Source: Euprymna scolopes
Lineage: Eukaryota
Assembly: GCA_053919585.1 (NCBI GenBank)
Contig: CM132785.1
DNA: 64,000 nucleotides
Reading direction: 5' to 3' (one strand)
The notes beneath the pieces are model-generated. The model saw only the letters and a program-made list of their open reading frames with translations. It had not been told where the DNA came from and ran no database searches. A program made the translations under genes and the position numbers. Numbering within the stretch: the stretch's first letter is position 1; each line of letters opens with the position of its first letter. This document shows positions 13,766 to 46,815 of the stretch, in pieces.

Positions 13766-13795
13766 GAAGAATACGACTTTGGCTGAGATTCTGTG

Positions 13796-15526
13796 ATGGA
13801 GAAATTTGCTGTATCCCCATTGAAATTCATCTGCTGCCTCGTGTTCTTCCTGTCCACGGCAGCTCATGGCAATCCTGAATTAACGTTGCTCCGAGTGCAG
13901 GAGAACCTGTCCAACAATACTCTTGTTGGGACATTCAGTACAAACCCAAGGAACATATACTGGACTGCTGCAAACAAAAATCTGCTGGAAAGAATGTTCA
14001 AAATTAACACCACTGCTGGCACAGTTCGAACCAGGGTTCCGCTTGACAGGGAAGAGCACAGTTCATATGAATTCACTGTCTTAGCAATTAACAAACAGTT
14101 CACTATAAAAATTGAGGTTCTAGATGTTAATGATAATGACCCTGTGTTTCATCCGAATTTCTTATCAAAACGACTCTCCGAGACAGCATCTGATATGAAG
14201 ATACCCTTAGGAAGCGTGTCCGACAGTGACATTGGGAAGAATAGTATAAGTGGATGTGAAATTGTCTCTGGCAATACAGACAACGTCTTTAGGCTCATAA
14301 CAAAGGTCACAAACCAAAGACTTCTGCTCGATCTGGCTGTCAATAGAAAGCTAGACTACGAACGCACCCCTTTCTACAGTTTGAAACTAAGAGCATTTGA
14401 TGGTGGGGATAAGCCACGCTCTTCATACTTGATGTTGAATATCAGCATAATTGACAGCAATGATAACTACCCCATGTTCCCAATGAGTCTCTACAATGCA
14501 ACGCTTATGGAGAATTCCACTGTTGGAACAAGCATCCTTCGCGTGTCGGCAACAGACTCTGATTCCGGAGAGAATGGAAAGATCCGTTTTTCAATTGACC
14601 ACAAATCTGACATGGAGGAGCACTTTGCCATTAATTCGGTCACTGGGGTCATCAGTTTGCAGAAACCAGTTGACTTTGAAACTCGGAAAATCTACGACTT
14701 GGTTGTCATAGCAACTGATAATGGCTCTGAACCTCTTGCATCCCAAGCCGCTGTCTCGATATCCATTTTGAACATTAACGAGCACCCACCCGATATCCAT
14801 CTGACTTTCCTTACTGGCAATGAGACTGTCGGCCGAATCTCAGAAGGAGCCAAACCTGGGGACTATGTAGCCCGAATATCTGTCAGTGATCCAGATGCTG
14901 CCCTCCAACCAGATGGCAACATCAATATAAACATCTCTCTTATTGGTGGAGATGGTCGTTTCAATCTAACGACTAAAGACAGCATTGTGTATTTGGTGTT
15001 AGTCCAGATGCCACTGGACCGTGAGCTTAAACCCTTTTACAACCTAACTGTGATCGCAAGAGACTCGGGTTCTCCCCCTTTAGAAAGCCGTCTATCCTTC
15101 TTGCTGAGGGTCGATGACATAAACGACAATAAGCCAAACTTCACGCGGACTGTCTATCATGCAGAAGTGCAGGAGGCTGTGCAAAAAGGTGTGTCCGTGA
15201 TCCAGGTTCATGCGGAGGACAAAGACGAAGGCAACAACTCTACCATAACCTATTCGATCATTCACACACCCGAAACCAATTCTAATTGGTTTACAATAAA
15301 TTCTCGCAATGGACTTATCACAACCAATGCCAAAGTTGACTGCGAGACAAATTCGCAGCCTCGGATTACCGTCCAAGCTATTGATGGCGGCGTTCCTCCA
15401 ATGTCTGCCACGGCATTAGTGATTGTTACCATTCGTGATATCAACGATAACCAACCCAGTTTCACGCATAGTTACTACAATGTTTCTATCCAGGAGAATA
15501 CGACAGTCAACACCTGCATTCTTACG
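13796..15526 (+). CDS. ds: Dachsous-type atypical cadherin, first coding exon (577 codons; signal peptide, EC1-EC5, start of EC6); gene is 3'-partial
   Basis: ATG at 13796 and a hydrophobic signal (FICCLVFFLSTAAHG). Five cadherin repeats with LDRE/LDYE/VDFE and DxNDN motifs. Dachsous-like segments ISEGAKPGDYVARISVSDPD and WFTINSRNGLITTNAKVDCETNSQPRITV...YNVSIQENTTVNTCIL. Ends at a canonical phase-0 donor, ACG|GTAAGT (15526/15527). Cadherin call is near certain; dachsous orthology rests on recalled motif similarity. Confidence 0.85.
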
Positions 15527-17083
15527 GTAAGTCTTTGGGTATTTGTTGTTTCTTTGTATGTTTTTTTTTATTTAATGTTTCTACTATCTGTAACAATTAA
15601 TTTGGTTTTCTTAGCAAGTTTGAACCTGATCTTGTCAGTTGTAATCAGTGTTTTCTTTTTAAAGGATTTTATTAGCCTCGTATGACATGGTGTGTGAATA
15701 GCAAACAAATAAATCAATTTAAACTTTGTATTGCCTCTTGCTGGGGAAATATTAAGCTTTTAGTGTGTGTGTGAGAGAGAGAGGTGTAAAATTTGCAGAA
15801 AAACATGAAAATTGCTGAGCTTTTTAATCACCAGCATGGATATCTGATGTTGCATGGTTGGCAACATTCAAAGAACATTAGTATTTGTGCAGGTTACAGA
15901 CCCTGCTAAAATGTTATTCAGACTACCATTAACATGAGGATATGAAGTTTTTTTTTGTTTTTTGTTTTTTTTTAACTATTCAGTAGTTTCATCTTTAACA
16001 ACCAAAATACTGTCAAAATAACAGGGTTTATAAACTGCATAAGCATCAGAACATGTATTATTTGGATTATTTTGAACTAGTATTCTCATCTTGAAAATTC
16101 TGAGGAATAATCCAGATTGTGGCTTTTCACTCTACAATTCAATGGTGAAGAGCGGATAGTTTTGCTATATCATTTTGTTTTGTGTAATGAAGTGTTTGAC
16201 GGTTCTAGCTGTTTAACAAACTGGGTATAGCCTAATGGATACTAATGCAGACTAAAATTGGTATTGCATTCACTTATGTAATATCACTATCATGAAAAGT
16301 GTGGGAGGATGAAGGAAAGTGATCTAATGGATGCTGGAATTGACTGAAATTGATTGTTGAAAACAGATGTTATTTAACTAGAATAGGTTTCTGTTAGGTT
16401 CGAGACAATGGATACCCACTGTAAGGATGCTTGTGCATGGAATCTATTTTGAAGCAAGGGTTATGCAGTCTGTACTATTTGAATATTTACACACTTTGAA
16501 TATTGTTTCTTGTTGAGAGAAATATCAAGCTCTTATTTAGTTTAAGGTGTATAAGGGATATTTTCTTAAGTTGAGATATGAGTGTGTATGTATGTATGTG
16601 TGTGCGTATATATATATATATATATATATAATGTTAGTGTGTGTGCTACTTTTCTCTTAATCTTTGTCTGCTAGTTTCACTTTTTCATTGAAATTACTGG
16701 ATCGATCCAGCTGAAATTTTGTGTTATAAGGTGTAGCAAATTAAGTATTATGGTACTTGTTTCATGCACAATTAAAGATTAATAGGATTAATATTTAATG
16801 CAAAAGTGAGCACACATTCATTTTATTTTTAAATGTATATATAATTACATTTCACAATAGCCTGAGCCCAGATTTCATTTTGATGGGAGGTTCATGGCAA
16901 ATATACTAAATGTAGGCTCAAGCATTTACCTTGTTAACAAATAGGATTTTGACTAAGTCTTGCCTTCATAGCTTGCAATAGGAAACGAATGCCAATCACC
17001 AAGTTTTTTTTTTTTCTTTCTCGAAAATTTATTTAAAATTCAACGGGCTCCATGTTTCTGAAGGAAAGTGTTAATTGTTGCAG

Positions 17084-41350: not shown

Positions 41351-41955
41351 TCTATATATTAATACCGTCGTACCTATTAACACACGTATGTTACGATTTC
41401 CAGATCATAAATTATTCGATCAGGAAATTCTATTCATTACAAAGGAGGATAGGTGATAATATACTAGGAACATTAAATAAATATATAAATAATTTAATAT
41501 TCGTAGTATTTTATCACCTATCCTCCTTTTTAATAAATAGGATCTCCCGACCACCAAACACTCAATGTAAAAAAATAAATAAAAAATAAAAAATTTTTAA
41601 ATGTCGCTTTTGAGCCTAATGTGAGACTAAAATATACCTTCTTGATCTCCTGGCTAGAATCCAAGGGTAGTATCTGTTCTGTATATAGATGATATAATGA
41701 TATAAGGTTTCTGTTCGTGTTAGGCGTTCATACAATGGAAATATGTTACATCCTTTTATAAGGATATTGAAGATAAACTGTAATCAGATATAGTTTGACG
41801 CTACCTTAACCAGATTAGTGAAATACTTTTACAGTTTTAACAAAACGGCTATAATATCGTGAGGTCTCCATTCACATTGAACGTCCACTGAATGCCAAGC
41901 AGCAATTTATTATATATAAAAGATGCCGCTGTGAAATTTCCATAGGTTTCGCTAG
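41351..41955 (+). mobile_element. Complete 605-bp non-autonomous Helitron
   Basis: A|TC...hairpin...CTAG|T with no TSD; internal inverted repeat at 41418-41552. Confidence 0.85.
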
Positions 41956-42480: not shown

Positions 42481-44043
42481 TTAAAGAATTTTTCCATTTC
42501 CAATATTATGTAACATGTTTTTAAATTCATGAAACATGCCTATTTCTCTTTCGATATTATATTTTGTCTATTCTCATCTTTGATATTCTTCACAACTTTT
42601 CAGGCGAGATAATCTGACTTTCGTCTGCACTCTTCATTTAATCCATGCATGTAGATTGTTCTAGTTCCGCCAGCCATGATTAGGTAGAACTAAGTTTTAT
42701 TCGATTAGTTTGTATCGACTGCAGTGAAGATTAAGCACTCCATCCCCAAAATACCGTAGCACCACCTGTCCATTCTGTATAAATCCCAGACTTGGATATG
42801 ATGCATTTGAAGAAGTTCGAAGGTTATATCGGCTAACATATTGCAAAAAATAACATCCAAGATGAGAATACCAGTCCAAAAAGCACAAAGTATCAATCCT
42901 CATCTCAAATTCTGAAACGAAAATAGCATGCTGAACATTATATGGACAATTTGCACTAATATTGACCCTGTTATTCCTTTCGGCATTTATGGGATAATGA
43001 GCACCGACGGGCAACAAGATTAACAAATCTATCTATTAATTTAAAGCAAATTAGAAGGGACCATTAAATATGCGAAAAATGACAGACCATGCTCGACTAT
43101 CCACATATGTTATAATTGACTATCTCTGATTATGTCATGTCCACTTTAAGTGGACAGGATAAGAAGAAATGGTCTTACAGGATGTAAGGAGGGTCGCTGT
43201 CCAACCTTACAACTCAGGTAGCTGTCCACTAGTTTTTCTGTCTGTTGCAATTATATTTCCCACCACGGGCACTTTTATGATTGGACTTGAAAGAACCTGT
43301 TGCCAGTGGAAATGATGTCTGCTTAGTTGCATATAAATAACTGGACCAGTCCGGGCAGTCCACTTCTATAGGTTTTTATCGGTCGGTGGAGGGTTGGTCG
43401 ACAAGTGCATGGGTGGGAGGGGGGATTGAATTGTGCAGCTGATTGCTGGCCGCGGATTCTTTTAAAGATTGGCTAGTTAAATAAAAATGAATTGAGGTGA
43501 GCTCGGGTGAATGGTAAGGTTGGGAAACATTGATTGATAGGAGGTAGAAGTTTGAAGGTTGCTTGGCACAGGAGGAGAGGAGATGTTAGAGAACGACTCT
43601 AAAAGTATGAAGGTTACTTGAACAGTAATGGATATTTGAGAAATTACGTTTGGCCAGATACGCACAGAAGGAATAGTGACAGGTTTTTTAAGACCGGAAT
43701 AAATGAGATAGATTAAGGGGGAAATTGTAACAGTTTGCAAGTTTAATTGAGAACTTCCAATAGAAAAGTAATTCAATCTGTAATTGCTATTTTCTGCTAA
43801 GTTAGCTTTAACCGTGAACGGTGAACTTGCTTTAATTGTATTTTCATCACCCAAATTGAAGATTTTATCTTAGTGCAGGGGTCACTAAACTACTGACGAA
43901 GGCTAAATCCGGCCTACCAAAGTTTTTAATCTGACCCACTGAGCTCTTTTGGAAAACAAAATATTCAGATAATTTTTTTTAAATAAGAATGTGTGAAAAT
44001 ATTGTGATTGTTTTCCTTCAGAAAATGATTTTAAAAAATGAAG

Positions 44044-44679
44044 TTTTTAGTCGCATGCAAGCGACTCTATAAGTCACTCGGTCGGTCGGTCGGTCGGTCC
44101 GTAACACTTTTGTGCTTGGCTTTTTTGGTTAATATCAAAGGCTTGTTGTTAATAGATGCTGTTCTTAGCTTTTTAGGCTTTTTTTGGCTTTTTGGCCAAG
44201 ATCAAAGTGTAGGGCCTTGTGCCTAATTTTGTTGTTTAAGAATCTTTTGTTTTTTACTTAATTGTATTTTCAAAATTTTTAAAAGCAATAAAATATATAA
44301 ACAAGATCAAAGTGTAGTATCTGTTCTTACTACATGCTGTACTTGTTTGACTTTGTGGTGTAAAGTGGGGGATCAGTTTTCTGTATTAATTTAATGTAAA
44401 ATGATCACCCACTTTACAACCAGTCAGTCTCAAAGCCATTCAAGTCATTCTCCAGATCATTCAAGTTGTTTTTGAAGGATTCCAGTTATTTTTTAAGCAT
44501 TCAAGTCCTTCAATTCATCCTTATGTTCATTAAAGTCATTCTAAGTCATTTACTTACTTAAGTCATTTCAGCCCATTTTTCGGTCATTTTAGTTTATCTT
44601 TAAGAATTTCATGTCAATCCTACATTCACGCATTCATTCATTACACAAGAGCATGCGACTAATGGCTATCGGTCTTGTT
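44044..44679 (+). mobile_element. Helentron-associated non-autonomous element (DINE-1/HINE-like)
   Basis: Subterminal inverted repeats TAGTCGCATGC (44048-44058) and GCATGCGACTA (44651-44661), a partial IR (gcgact) after the 5' one, a (GGTC)n microsatellite, a central degenerate aagtcatt array, and T-run termini. Confidence 0.8.
44177..44329 (+). pseudogene. U2 snRNA 5' fragment interrupted by an 89-bp insertion
   Basis: ggctttttggccaagatcaaagtgtag [insert] caagatcaaagtgtagtatctgttctta matches the U2 5' end (GGCCUUUUGGCUAAGAUCAAAGUGUAGUAUCUGUUCUUA), including the branch-point recognition sequence GUAGUA. Confidence 0.85.
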
Positions 44680-45477: not shown

Positions 45478-45667
45478 CAAACAAAACCAGATGCTTTTAC
45501 AAACTATATTAGAAGAGAAGCAACATTCGCCTTAGCCAGGTTGAAGCAATTTCCTCTAAAATAGAAAGTATCTAGGGAATATCAAATTAAAAGTAGTCCC
45601 CAGCCGCATGTAGAGTTTGGTCAGAGATGTTTTTATAGTCTGTGCAGGCTGGTGTCTACGTCCAACA

Positions 45668-45776
45668 TACAGCACCTAGTACTTCCAAACAGTTATTTAT
45701 CTTGTACTGACCAGGTACAATGCTGCTTAACATCGGTAATCTAATGGAGACTGGTATGTCAATATGATTATGTTGA
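45668..45776 (-). pseudogene. Second 5S rRNA-derived pseudogene
   Basis: tacagcacctagtacttcc...gtactgaccagg...tgcttaacatcggtaatc...tgattatg aligns with reverse-complement 5S and with 31683-31790. Confidence 0.7.
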
Positions 45777-46815
45777 ATCTATAAACTATATAGCTAGAAA
45801 ATTAAATTGTGTAACTATATACAGATTTGACCTGAAATTACCTACCAAATGGTTGATATGCTGTAAAACCCAATCATAGCTTCAGTTTTAAACTTACTGC
45901 AGAGTTATATTTGTTTAAGGTGTTTTGTTTTTTTTGTTTTCTTTTTTCACTTCTATTGTAGAAATGTGGAAGTTGGAGAGGAAAAATTTTTGCAGTTGTT
46001 AGTCAAGTTTATAATCACTCCCATACCACCACCTCCCAACTAAAAATATCTCCTTTTAAATAGACTTACTTGGTAAGAGATGTATATTTTTATTTTTCCT
46101 GTTTTGGCCTCTCTCCCCTTCGTCCCCTTTTTGTTCACCCAAAACAGCATATTGTCAATGAACCTTAAGCAGATGCTGAGATAGGAACAACCTTAGTGGG
46201 GAGTTCGGCAGCAAAATCTTTTTATATTACATTTAAATTCATGCAAGTTGACATGGTCGGGCTTGCATGGAGTAAATTCCAATTGCAAGCAGTCAGAGGA
46301 AAACGGCTATTAAAGTAAATAGAAATCTTTAGGCGTCTAGAGATTTCTACAGTGAAGGGGTGAGATTTTGATGCTAACCAGGTTGGTTGAGACTTACTTT
46401 ACGTTGATGGCTGGGGATGCAAACGCAAGTTCATCAGTGCTTGGGCTAGAGCTTGGCAAACATTGCAAGACCTTTGCATAACACTAGAAATCTTTGATTC
46501 CGAAAAAGTGTACCAAGACATGATTCAATTTTTGAGTTACAATCTGAACCCGACACCTTATAAATGACTGATGTCGAACTGACTGAATTATATACAGTAA
46601 AGCAAATACTTAGTTTTTTTTTTTTTTTTTTTTCAATTACAGTTTGTGTTGGCTTTTTCTGATTTGGACTTTGTTTTTCTTTTATTAATTAGATTTCTTC
46701 TGGTCTTTGGCAAAATGAAAAGTGGGAGAAAATAAAGAAAGGCAGAAATAGTAATCGGAAAAGTGAACAATTTGAAGTATGATTGAAAAGAACGATTTCT
46801 TAGGCATGTTATTCG

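What the first reader, a model, noticed from the sequence alone, without database searches (positions are those of the whole stretch)
44112..44329. Rolling-circle element carrying tandem U2 snRNA 5' ends
Seen: just after the (GGTC)n tract are two U2-like units, a degenerate one (ggcttttttggttaatatcaaag...ctgttctta, about 44112-44167) and a well-preserved one (44177-44329). Both stop at the same point (ctgttctta) and span stem-loop I and the branch-point recognition region. Known: Helentron/DINE-1-like elements capture and tandemly amplify sequence at this position. Inference: a family dispersing ~50-nt U2 modules through the genome, creating landing pads for U2-targeting retroelements and placing U2-like sequence in pre-mRNA.
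Basis: partly seen in the sequence, partly recalled or inferred. Interest (0 to 1): 0.7.

Follow-up and report, generated by a model that had tools for sequence, protein, structure and literature searches.

The report
Transposon family carrying U2 landing pads
This 636-base stretch is one of about 6,000 copies of a small non-coding, rolling-circle-type DNA transposon that carries a duplicated piece of the animal's own U2 splicing RNA, and jumping genes that home to U2 have landed in that piece, leaving an 89-base tail in this copy.

Summary
The U2-like sequence is real and belongs to the whole family. Window 44044-44679 is one copy of a non-coding element with Helentron/HINE hallmarks. These are an 11-bp subterminal inverted repeat, a nearby complementary repeat, a (GTCK)n tract, T-rich ends and no target duplication. 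Pattern counts in the 5.9-Gb genome give 6,157 left ends, 5,910 U2-to-body junctions and 6,768 right ends.

Unit 2 matches this genome's own U2 gene at 37 of 39 bases, including a lineage-specific extra A. Uninterrupted family copies reach the Rfam U2 threshold.

- The "well-preserved unit" is one U2 module split by an 89-bp, 5'-truncated tail of a very abundant L1/Tx1-type LINE, flanked by a perfect 16-bp target duplication.
- The final "ctgttctta" of unit 1 aligns with an 18-nt post-U2 box of unit 2. The two units are therefore tandem copies of one roughly 70-nt unit.

The landing-pad idea holds. Other copies carry LINE fragments of 95 to more than 1,581 bp at the same base. Extra DNA occurs only in the 5' 150 bp that hold the U2 modules.

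The autonomous Helentron partner, expression and any splicing effect were not tested. This scan had already reached the same reading on other DNA of this genome.

The parts
44044..44679 (+). One complete copy of the non-autonomous Helentron-type (HINE-like) element. The compact family form is about 520 bp. This copy is 636 bp because of the insert.
   Evidence: The family ends were defined on 17-29 copies. The own-genome search gave 4,313 first-look candidates.
44044..44047 (+). 5' terminal T run, 2-6 T across copies.
   Evidence: It matches the 'string of Ts on the boundaries' described for Helentrons (PMC4067079).
44048..44058 (+). 5' subterminal inverted repeat TAGTCGCATGC. The family consensus is TAGTCGCGTGC.
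   Evidence: The left-end pattern occurs 6,157 times with 0 in the control.
44061..44066 (+). Short inverted repeat GCGACT, complementary to AGTCGC inside the subTIR. Together they form a 6-bp hairpin.
   Evidence: The DNA fold gives -5.7 kcal/mol with z = -3.0.
44078..44099 (+). Tetranucleotide tract (TCGG/GGTC)5.5. Across copies it is a variable (GTCK)n tract.
   Evidence: TRF. Its length varies between copies. The same GTCY/GTCK motif is reported in oyster Cg_HINE left flanks (PMC7492417).
44118..44167 (+). U2-derived unit 1, degenerate. It has U2 stem-loop I and GATCAAAG, then a roughly 7-nt deletion that removes GUAGUA, then the post-U2 box.
   Evidence: Alignment A1. Anchored alignment with unit 2 (z about 6).
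44168..44212 (+). U2-derived unit 2, 5' half, corresponding to U2 nt about 4-37. The family consensus has a perfect 7-bp stem-loop I palindrome, CTTGGCC..GGCCAAG.
44197..44212 (+). Target-site duplication, copy 1 (CAAGATCAAAGTGTAG).
44213..44301 (+). 89-bp 5'-truncated 3' tail of an L1/Tx1-type LINE, the 'type A' tail ending AATAAAATATATAAA.
   Evidence: It matches the last 95 nt of the full-length LINE in L046. By eye it differs at only 2 of 89 positions from the tail in L034. The LINE encodes an ORF2 with Exo_endo_phos, RVT_1 and zf-RVT domains.
44302..44317 (+). Target-site duplication, copy 2.
44302..44329 (+). U2-derived unit 2, 3' half, ending at U2 nt about 48 (CTGTTCTTA).
   Evidence: The junction of this half with the element body occurs 5,910 times.
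44330..44347 (+). Post-U2 'box' (CTACATGCTGTACTT..). It is shared with unit 1 and, more weakly, with the U2-headed SINE families. It is absent from the U2 gene.
44356..44422 (+). Strong internal hairpin with arms of about 20 bp, conserved in the family.
   Evidence: The DNA fold gives -18.3 kcal/mol with z = -6.3. An inverted self-match is seen in every copy.
44422..44506 (+). Degenerate 20-21-bp tandem repeats of the TTCAAGTCATT type within the element body.
   Evidence: TRF.
44651..44661 (+). 3' subterminal inverted repeat GCATGCGACTA.
44662..44679 (+). 3' terminus ..ATGGCTATCGGYCTTGTT.
   Evidence: The right-end pattern occurs 6,768 times with 0 in the control.

Best explanation
Window 44044-44679 is one copy of a non-coding DNA transposon family of about 6,000 copies with the anatomy of Helentron-associated interspersed elements (HINE/DINE-1-like). 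Such elements are presumed to be moved in trans by a Helentron Rep-helicase-endonuclease through rolling-circle transposition into T-rich sites, without target duplication.

Between the left-flank microsatellite and the right-hand body, the family consensus carries two tandem copies of a roughly 70-nt unit. Each unit is the 5' domain of this lineage's own U2 snRNA (nt about 4-48: stem-loop I and the branch-point-binding region) plus about 18 further nt. Unit 1 has decayed. Unit 2 is nearly identical to U2.

Unit 2 keeps the sequence that U2-homing L1/Tx1-type LINEs, and the short elements that depend on them, recognise and nick. Each HINE copy is therefore an extra target for them. In the window copy one such LINE started target-primed reverse transcription at the nick before CAAGATC. 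It copied only its last 89 nt and left a 16-bp target duplication.

Shown: family membership and copy number, the U2 origin of the module, the identity of the insert, repeated independent hits at the same base, and confinement of insertions to the U2-bearing part.

Inferred: mobilisation by a Helentron, how the U2 unit first entered the element, and that the pads helped the LINE and SINE families expand.
For: HINE anatomy:
- Left end: T run, TAGTCGCRTGC, complementary GCGACT, then (GTCK)n. Right end: GCAYGCGACTA plus 18 nt ending GTT.
- None of 17 complete copies has a target duplication.
- The features match the definitions in PMC4067079 and PMC7492417.

Family size and U2 content:
- 6,157 left ends, 5,910 U2-to-body junctions and 6,768 right ends, with all reversed-pattern controls at 0.

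U2 origin:
- The true U2 array has 1,187 pattern hits at a 764-bp period and carries GATCAAAGTGTAG with the same extra A.
- Alignment A1 supports the match. Rfam gives 50.2, 46.7 and 46.1 bits on compact copies.

The insert is a LINE tail:
- The 89 bp match the 3' end of a LINE with at least 14,714 first-look candidates and intact ORFs. ORF2 is 1,145 aa with Exo_endo_phos, RVT_1 and zf-RVT domains. ORF1 is 868 aa with a zf-CCHC domain.
- ORF2 aligns to human L1 ORF2p over residues 5-860 with E = 8e-72.

Same-site, independent hits:
- Type-A LINE fragments of 95, 135, 294, 500, 1137, 1142 and more than 1581 bp all end at CAAGATCAAAGTGTAG. Two or more other LINE subfamilies and SINE units sit there too.
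- The type-A tail joined to the HINE body occurs 85 times, 30 of them perfect over 43 nt.

Insertions are confined to the pad, on contig C1:
- The distance from the U2-to-body junction to the right end is 301-403 bp in 17 of 17 pairs.
- The distance from the left end to the junction is compact in only 2 of 8 pairs.
- The distance from the left end to the right end is compact in 3 of 12 pairs and one pair is shorter. The remaining pairs are expanded by 0.25-3.7 kb, with one 10.3-kb pairing that may join two separate elements.

The LINE also sits in real U2 genes and in its own U2-like 5' head:
- Gaps of 7.8-8.3 kb interrupt the U2 array, and an ORF2 hit lies in one of them.
- Tandem LINE arrays have a 7.6-kb period and the junction was read in L046.
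Against:
- The short 3' palindrome expected of HINEs is not convincing (z = -1.7 and -0.6).
- No empty site was recovered.
- Only two units are present, so this is not the long central array seen in oyster HINEs.
- The U2 part is no better conserved than the other well-aligned, gap-free parts of the body (0.97 against 0.96-0.99; the overall mean for the rest is 0.94), so there is no sign of selection on it after insertion.
- LINE insertion into the real U2 array rests on coordinates only. The junction there was not read.
Confidence: 0.8

Rival explanations
1. This rival accepts the same element and the same landing-pad role but proposes a different origin. The U2 units were not captured from the U2 gene by the rolling-circle machinery. 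They are heads of U2-headed short retroposons (SINEU-like) that inserted into, or were picked up by, the ancestral HINE. They were duplicated before the family amplified.
For: - The 5' limit of unit 2 lies within about 3 nt of the U2 transcript start. Its 3' limit (nt about 46-48) is the same as in the heads of the SINE families and of the LINE.
- Both HINE units continue beyond the U2 homology with a shared box (z about 6). That box resembles the one following the SINE1 and SINE3 heads (p about 0.005 and 0.03) and does not resemble the U2 gene (p 0.76).
- U2 heads matching the GGCCAAG-type probe within one mismatch occur 16,031 times, far more than the HINE copies, although real U2 genes and GGCTAAG-type heads are included in that count.
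- Many HINE copies carry whole SINE units stacked at the module.
- Earlier notes of this scan read the middle of the element as a retroposon stack.
Against: - The consensus has no SINE body or A-rich tail next to either unit.
- The HINE body is not significantly similar to SINE bodies, to the LINE 5' UTR or to the rest of U2 (z at most 1.8).
- The box similarity to the SINEs is short and only modestly significant.
- The direction could be the reverse, with SINE heads derived from a HINE copy.
Confidence: 0.45
2. The element is not Helentron-derived. It would be a MITE of a cut-and-paste superfamily, or a SINE-like retroposon that merely has inverted repeats near its ends.
For: - No Rep-helicase partner was linked to it here.
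- The 3' palindrome is weak.
- The element is short and non-coding.
Against: - None of 17 complete copies has a target duplication.
- The inverted repeats are subterminal, with 4-5 nt before the 5' repeat and 18 nt after the 3' repeat.
- The combination of a complementary short repeat and a (GTCK)n tract directly after the 5' repeat is the specific signature of mollusc HINEs and DINE-1-like elements.
- There is no A-rich or LINE-like 3' tail, and the ends are sharply defined in thousands of copies.
Confidence: 0.12
3. A one-off event. A U2 retrocopy landed once in this particular copy and the rest of the family lacks U2.
For: None was found.
Against: - There are 5,910 U2-to-body junctions against 6,157 left ends and 6,768 right ends.
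- All 30 fetched copies carry the module.
Confidence: 0.01
4. The U2 modules have a host-level function. Examples would be intronic sense copies that mimic the U2 5' end, antisense copies that pair with U2 snRNA, or small RNAs made from them. The modules would be kept for that reason.
For: - About 6,000 copies lie on both strands (3,010 forward and 2,900 reverse).
- The window copy lies 28 kb downstream of a large cadherin exon on the same strand, so it may be intronic and in sense orientation.
Against: - The U2 part is no better conserved than the well-aligned neutral body.
- Unit 1 has lost GUAGUA.
- Most copies are disrupted by insertions.
- No U2 promoter elements are carried.
Confidence: 0.05

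Closest known systems
HINE / DINE-1-like non-autonomous Helentrons (Thomas et al. 2014, PMC4067079) and oyster Cg_HINE (Vojvoda Zeljko et al. 2020, PMC7492417)
   Same: - Subterminal inverted repeats of 11-13 bp.
- A short complementary repeat next to the 5' one.
- A GTCY/GTCK-type tetranucleotide tract at the end of the left flank.
- Repeats embedded between the left and right modules.
- T-rich boundaries, no target duplication, no coding capacity, and thousands of copies.
   Different: - The embedded repeat is derived from a spliceosomal RNA and is present in only two copies. Oyster elements carry anonymous 150-180-bp satellite monomers in arrays.
- The 3' palindrome is weak.
- No partner Helentron has been tied to it.
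Keno (Tx1-clade, AP-endonuclease LINEs specific for U2 snRNA genes; Kojima and Fujiwara 2004, as cited in PMC4494074 and PMC4640811)
   Same: - An AP-endonuclease plus RT LINE of the L1/Tx1 type that inserts at a fixed place in the conserved 5' region of U2.
- It is also found in the real U2 array, by coordinates.
   Different: - The 3' junction of the LINE seen in the window lies before (C)AAGATC, at U2 nt about 22, with a 16-bp duplication. Keno and Utopia leave U2 from nt 39 downstream.
- In this genome the nt-39 position is used by the SINE units.
- Clade membership by RT phylogeny was not tested.
- The copy number is very much higher, with at least 14,714 candidates.
Tx1L in Tx1D (Xenopus), and Tx1-Mar plus SINEU in Mariner-N4_AMi (crocodilians; Kojima 2015, PMC4494074)
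   Same: - Site-specific Tx1-type LINEs and their short partners use a high-copy DNA transposon as their landing site.
- Some of those LINEs and SINEs carry U1 or U2 heads.
- Tandem stacking of insertions occurs.
   Different: - In those systems the target inside the DNA transposon is not U2-like. The LINE specificity had moved to a transposon sequence.
- Here the DNA transposon carries a real U2 fragment, so the LINE keeps its U2 specificity.
- The carrier here is a Helentron-type element, not a piggyBac or mariner element.
YURE elements in the U2-derived satellite U2_sat of Ciona (PMC4640811)
   Same: A U2-related retrotransposon uses U2-derived repeats other than functional genes as targets.
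   Different: - YURE is a restriction-like-endonuclease element of the NeSL/Utopia lineage.
- Its target is a tandem satellite, not a module dispersed by a mobile DNA element.
SINEU (snRNA-headed SINEs; PMC4494074)
   Same: A U2 5' fragment is reused as a module of a mobile element. The U2-headed short retroposons of this genome are of that kind and sit in many HINE copies.
   Different: The window element itself is not a retroposon. It has no 3' tail, it has subterminal inverted repeats, and the U2 units are internal.

Membership tests
HINE (Helentron-associated interspersed element) | Subterminal inverted repeats of 11-15 bp, a few nt from the 5' terminus and tens of nt from the 3' terminus | tested here: met
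   TAGTCGCATGC lies at 44048-58, after 4 T. GCATGCGACTA lies at 44651-61, 18 nt before the end. Both are conserved across copies.
HINE (Helentron-associated interspersed element) | A short inverted repeat complementary to the 5' subTIR, 1-12 bp (oyster Cg_HINE) or 3-22 bp (DINE-1) away | tested here: met
   AGTCGC (44049-54) pairs with GCGACT (44061-66). The hairpin has z = -3.0.
HINE (Helentron-associated interspersed element) | A microsatellite at the end of the left flank (GTCY/GTCK type in molluscs), variable in length | tested here: met
   (GGTC)5 is present in the window. Length and GTCG/GTCT/GTCA composition vary between copies.
HINE (Helentron-associated interspersed element) | Tandem repeats embedded between the left and right modules | tested here: met
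   Two tandem units of about 70 nt (U2 part plus box) are present. One to two units are seen per compact copy: L016 has one and the others have two. This is only a minimal array.
HINE (Helentron-associated interspersed element) | A short palindrome (5-10 bp stem) between the 3' subTIR and the 3' end | tested here: inconclusive
   Only weak pairings are present (ACAAG..CTTGT, GGC..GCC), with z = -1.7 and -0.6.
HINE (Helentron-associated interspersed element) | Insertion into T-rich or TT sites without target-site duplication | tested here: met
   17 complete copies have a T run at the 5' boundary, a ..GTT 3' end and no shared flanking duplication. No empty site was recovered to fix the exact dinucleotide.
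HINE (Helentron-associated interspersed element) | An autonomous Helentron (Rep, helicase, AP endonuclease) in the same genome sharing the subTIRs and the last 60 bp | not tested
An earlier scan note (s1-250432) reports a Rep-helicase followed by an AP-endonuclease module in this genome, but its ends were not compared here.
U2 snRNA gene (Rfam RF00004) | Full-length RNA of about 190 nt with stem-loops I-IV and an Sm site, reaching the family threshold | tested here: not met
   Only U2 nt about 4-48 are present. The window copy scores 20.7 bits. Compact copies reach 46-50 bits on the 5' part alone, and the rest of the model is unaligned. Real genes read differently from nt 49 on.
Keno / Tx1-clade U2-specific LINE (for the 89-bp insert and its source element) | ORF2 with an N-terminal AP endonuclease and an L1-type RT | tested here: met
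   Pfam finds Exo_endo_phos, RVT_1 and zf-RVT. ORF2 aligns to L1 ORF2p with E = 8e-72.
Keno / Tx1-clade U2-specific LINE (for the 89-bp insert and its source element) | Specific insertion into U2 snRNA sequence | tested here: met
   Every LINE 3' end that was read is followed by (C)AAGATCAAAGTGTAGTATCTGTTC, whether in a HINE, a SINE head or a LINE head. Presence in the U2 array rests on coordinates.
Keno / Tx1-clade U2-specific LINE (for the 89-bp insert and its source element) | The same insertion point as Keno and Utopia, with the 3' flank starting at U2 nt 39 | tested here: not met
   The 3' flank of the type-A LINE starts at about nt 22, with a 16-bp duplication ending at nt 37. The nt-39 junction is seen only for the SINE units.
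Keno / Tx1-clade U2-specific LINE (for the 89-bp insert and its source element) | RT phylogeny placing it inside the Tx1 clade next to Keno | not tested
   No reference Tx1 or Keno sequences were available in the tools used.

The most novel reading that the evidence does not exclude
The Helentron-type family and the U2-homing retroelements form a self-reinforcing system. By spreading about 6,000 copies of a still-cleavable U2 target, roughly five times the number of real U2 genes, the DNA transposon freed a gene-specific LINE lineage from its small genomic niche. This let the LINE and its SINEs reach tens of thousands of copies in a 5.9-Gb genome. The intronic U2-like or anti-U2 modules might additionally influence U2 snRNP recruitment or splicing.
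Probability: 0.15. Interest if true: 0.8.

Novelty: new variant of a known kind. Interest (0 to 1): 0.5.

Why it matters
Site-specific retrotransposons are usually thought to be limited by the number of their target genes. Here a DNA transposon of a different class multiplies the target itself.

The window copy shows the whole chain in 636 bases: the carrier, the borrowed U2 piece and the retroelement that landed in it.

If it holds, the system offers a natural experiment on several questions:
- how target specificity shapes the copy number of LINEs
- how nested transposons inflate large mollusc-type genomes
- which bases of U2 the endonuclease needs, because unit 1, which lacks GUAGUA, carried no insert in the copies whose junctions were read

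No paper in the searchable library joins Helentron or Helitron elements with U2 landing pads. The nearest precedents are Tx1L in Tx1D and Tx1-Mar with SINEU in a mariner element.

Tried and rejected
- The Rfam U2 family search on the whole genome failed twice. It was replaced by short-pattern searches.
- A canonical U2 pattern found only 2 sites, because this lineage's U2 has an extra A (explained).
After that, only short motifs of the element were used for counts in the window's own genome.
No further loci could be read, which blocked the search for the autonomous partner, the LINE junction in the real U2 array, and a larger unbiased sample.
- An empty-site search with flanks against the loci held gave only simple-repeat noise.
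- The oyster HINE substructure table in the supplement was illegible.
- The idea that the HINE body is a SINE body was tested and not supported.
- The idea that the U2 part is under constraint was not supported.
- The 3' palindrome was not significant.
- The count was meant to give intact unit-2 copies. It is confounded by real U2 genes and SINE heads, so I used it only for cross-matching on C1. There, 13 of 51 perfect junctions had a perfect upstream half.
- The one-off retrocopy reading was rejected by the counts.
- No stretch was taken for human, and no N was filled.
Full report
**What is at the coordinates**

The sequence reads as follows:
- a T run (44044-47)
- TAGTCGCATGC (44048-58)
- its partial complement GCGACT (44061-66)
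- (GGTC)5 (44080-99)
- a spacer
- a first U2-like stretch (44118-67)
- a second U2-like stretch that starts near 44168 and ends with tatctgttctta at 44329
- a body of about 320 bp with a strong hairpin (44356-44422; z = -6.3) and degenerate 20-bp repeats
- GCATGCGACTA (44651-61)
- 18 more bases ending GTT (44679)

Rfam sees only a weak U2 match in the window (20.7 bits, E 0.77).

**It is a family, and the family carries the U2 piece**

A search of the window's own 5.9-Gb genome with 44040-44670 gave 4,313 first-look candidates. In most scored copies, query positions 5-173 are joined directly to positions 263-631. The 89 bp at window 44213-44301 are therefore an insert peculiar to a minority of copies.

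Compact copies score 50.2, 46.7 and 46.1 bits on Rfam U2, whose gathering score is 46. The match covers U2 positions of about 1-50 only.

Pattern counts, each with a reversed-pattern control of 0:

| Feature counted | Matches |
|---|---|
| Left ends | 6,157 |
| Junctions of the U2 3' half with the element body | 5,910 |
| Right ends | 6,768 |

**The U2 piece comes from this lineage's own U2**

The genuine genes form a tandem array with a 764-bp period on contig C9, plus scattered copies, for 1,187 pattern hits. Read in L051, the gene has GATCAAAGTGTAG, one A more than the usual metazoan sequence. The HINE module has the same A.

Over GGCC..CTGTTCTTA the family consensus matches the gene at 38 of 39 positions and the window copy at 37 of 39. 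Homology starts about 3-4 nt after the U2 transcript start and stops at about nt 48. From there the gene continues with stem-loop IIa and the element does not.

**Two corrections to the observation**

First, the "well-preserved unit" 44177-44329 is one module cut in two. CAAGATCAAAGTGTAG occurs at 44197-212 and again at 44302-317, and 89 foreign bases lie between the two copies.

Second, an alignment anchored on the U2 part shows that unit 1 has lost about 7 nt, including GUAGUA. Its final ctgttctta corresponds to ctgtactt in the 18 nt that follow the U2 part of unit 2. The two post-U2 segments are clearly homologous to each other (z about 6, none of 2,000 shuffles as good). The two units are thus tandem copies of one unit of about 70 nt, not two U2 fragments that end at the same U2 base.

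**What the 89 bp are**

In other copies the same tail extends upstream for 135, 294, 500, 1137, 1142 and more than 1581 bp and runs into an open reading frame. That frame belongs to a very abundant, young LINE with at least 14,714 first-look candidates at 94-98% protein identity.

Many copies have intact ORFs:
- ORF2 is 1,145 aa with AP-endonuclease, reverse-transcriptase and zf-RVT domains.
- ORF1 is 868 aa with a CCHC knuckle.
- ORF2 aligns to human L1 ORF2p over residues 5-860 (E = 8e-72), which places it in the L1/Tx1 type.

The full-length copy in L046 ends in the same GGCCTTGTGCCTAATTTTG.. tail, followed by AGATCAAAGTGTAGTATCTGTTC. It also begins right after a U2-like head. This explains the 7.6-kb tandem LINE arrays seen.

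Every LINE tail read in 15 further loci is followed by the same U2 bases. Downstream of those bases lies the HINE body, one of three U2-headed SINE families, or another LINE.

Gaps of 7.8-8.3 kb in the real U2 array, one of which holds an ORF2 hit about 865 bp from the next U2 copy, indicate full-length LINEs in real genes too. This rests on coordinates only.

**The landing-pad claim**

At least three or four different tail types precede GATCAAAGTGTAG in HINE copies. The type-A inserts have different truncation points, so these are independent events at one base.

The type-A tail joined to the HINE body occurs 85 times, 30 of them without a mismatch in 43 nt.

On contig C1 I paired the perfect hits of the three end and junction patterns:
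- The 3' body is constant in length, 301-403 bp in 17 of 17 pairs.
- The 150 bp between the left end and the U2-to-body junction are compact in only 2 of 8 pairs.
- The whole element is compact in 3 of 12 pairs. The rest are expanded by about 0.25 to 3.7 kb, apart from one shorter pair and one 10.3-kb pairing that may not be a single element.

The extra DNA therefore goes into the part that holds the U2 modules. In the copies read it sits in unit 2. By eye the 89-bp tail of the window differs at only 2 positions from the tail in L034. Its duplication is perfect, and the HINE copies lie 1-6% from their consensus. The LINE hit is therefore probably more recent than the HINE insertion.

**Is it a Helentron derivative?**

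Thomas et al. (PMC4067079) and Vojvoda Zeljko et al. (PMC7492417) define HINEs by these features:
- subterminal inverted repeats
- a nearby complementary short repeat
- a left-flank microsatellite (GTCY/GTCK in oysters)
- embedded tandem repeats
- a 3' palindrome
- T-rich boundaries
- no target duplication

All are met here except the palindrome, which is inconclusive. The link to an autonomous partner could not be tested, because no more genome DNA could be fetched. I therefore file the element as HINE-like with about 0.75-0.8 confidence.

**Where the U2 unit came from**

Direct capture from the gene and descent from a U2-headed retroposon are both possible.

For the retroposon route:
- The unit begins near the RNA's 5' end.
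- It ends where the SINE and LINE heads end.
- Its post-U2 box resembles that of SINE1 and SINE3 (p about 0.005 and 0.03) but not the gene (p 0.76).

Against it:
- No SINE body or tail is adjacent in the consensus.
- The HINE body shows no significant similarity to SINE bodies.

I leave this open at roughly even odds.

**What was not shown**

- Expression and any effect on pre-mRNA were not tested.
- A five-domain cadherin exon lies at 13793-15685 on the same strand. The copy may therefore be intronic and in sense orientation, but the gene model was not built.
- The U2 part is no better conserved than the other well-aligned stretches of the element, which argues against a host function.

**Comparison and novelty**

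U2-specific LINEs (Keno, Utopia), Tx1-type LINEs that live in DNA transposons (Tx1L in Tx1D; Tx1-Mar with SINEU in Mariner-N4_AMi) and U2-derived satellites used as targets (YURE in U2_sat) are all published.

What is different here:
- A Helentron-type element carries a real U2 fragment and thereby multiplies the LINE's natural target.
- The LINE's junction lies about 17 nt upstream of the Keno/Utopia point.

No paper in the library links Helentron or Helitron elements with U2 in this way.

The same system had already been described by this scan on other stretches of this genome. My counts and reading agree with those notes and were obtained independently from the window outward.

Noticed in passing
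G000 contig C9, about 168.87-168.97 Mb and beyond (loci L051-L059): The real U2 snRNA genes form a very large tandem array with a 764-bp period (1,187 pattern hits genome-wide). The U2 of this lineage has an extra A (GATCAAAGUGUAG). Gaps of 7.8-8.3 kb interrupt the array, and one of them holds a LINE ORF2 hit.
   Followed up: partly
L035, L043, L044, L046:412-640, L036-L042 (downstream of LINE tails): At least three families of U2-headed short retroposons are present. SINE1 and SINE2 share the tail ..GGCCTTGTGCCTAATTTGCTCAGTGGGGGAGCAAATAAATACC. They stack head to tail with junctions before ATCTGTTC, the Keno/Utopia position. SINE3 ends ..GGCATTGTAAATAGGTAC and lies in unique DNA.
   Followed up: partly
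L010, L013, L019, L020, L021, L024, L027, L029: A discrete class of HINE copies has a roughly 245-bp SINE2 unit between two copies of the U2 head, with the recurrent junction ..AAATACC|CTTTTCTTGGCC. This could be a HINE subfamily that kept transposing after the SINE hit, or a long (35-43 bp) target duplication. I did not resolve which.
   Followed up: partly
window 45664-45780 (-); L004:640-757, L025:1890-2007, L030:687-806: 5S rRNA-like sequences score 29-41.7 bits on Rfam RF00001 (gathering score 38) and recur next to unrelated loci. They are probably a 5S-derived SINE family.
   Followed up: no
L026:587-631: A type I hammerhead ribozyme motif scores above the Rfam threshold (37.9 bits against 34).
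   Followed up: no
window 41421-41549: A near-perfect AT-rich foldback of about 125 bp is picked up as several plant and animal miRNA precursor families. It is most likely a small inverted-repeat element.
   Followed up: no
window 41634-41771 (+) and about 18303 (-): Two older, degenerate U2-head-like sequences lie elsewhere in the window (23.8 bits for the first). They are probably decayed U2-headed retroposons.
   Followed up: no
window 13793-15685 (+): A large open exon encodes five or more cadherin repeats (Pfam Cadherin, E = 5e-85), in protocadherin style. The HINE copy lies 28 kb downstream on the same strand.
   Followed up: partly
G000 C1:6987238-7018010, C7:54519-77877, C5:159317577-159325485, C14:62617593-62625513: Head-to-tail arrays of full-length LINE copies have a period of 7.6-7.7 kb. 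They are explained by each copy landing in the U2-like 5' head of the previous one.
   Followed up: partly
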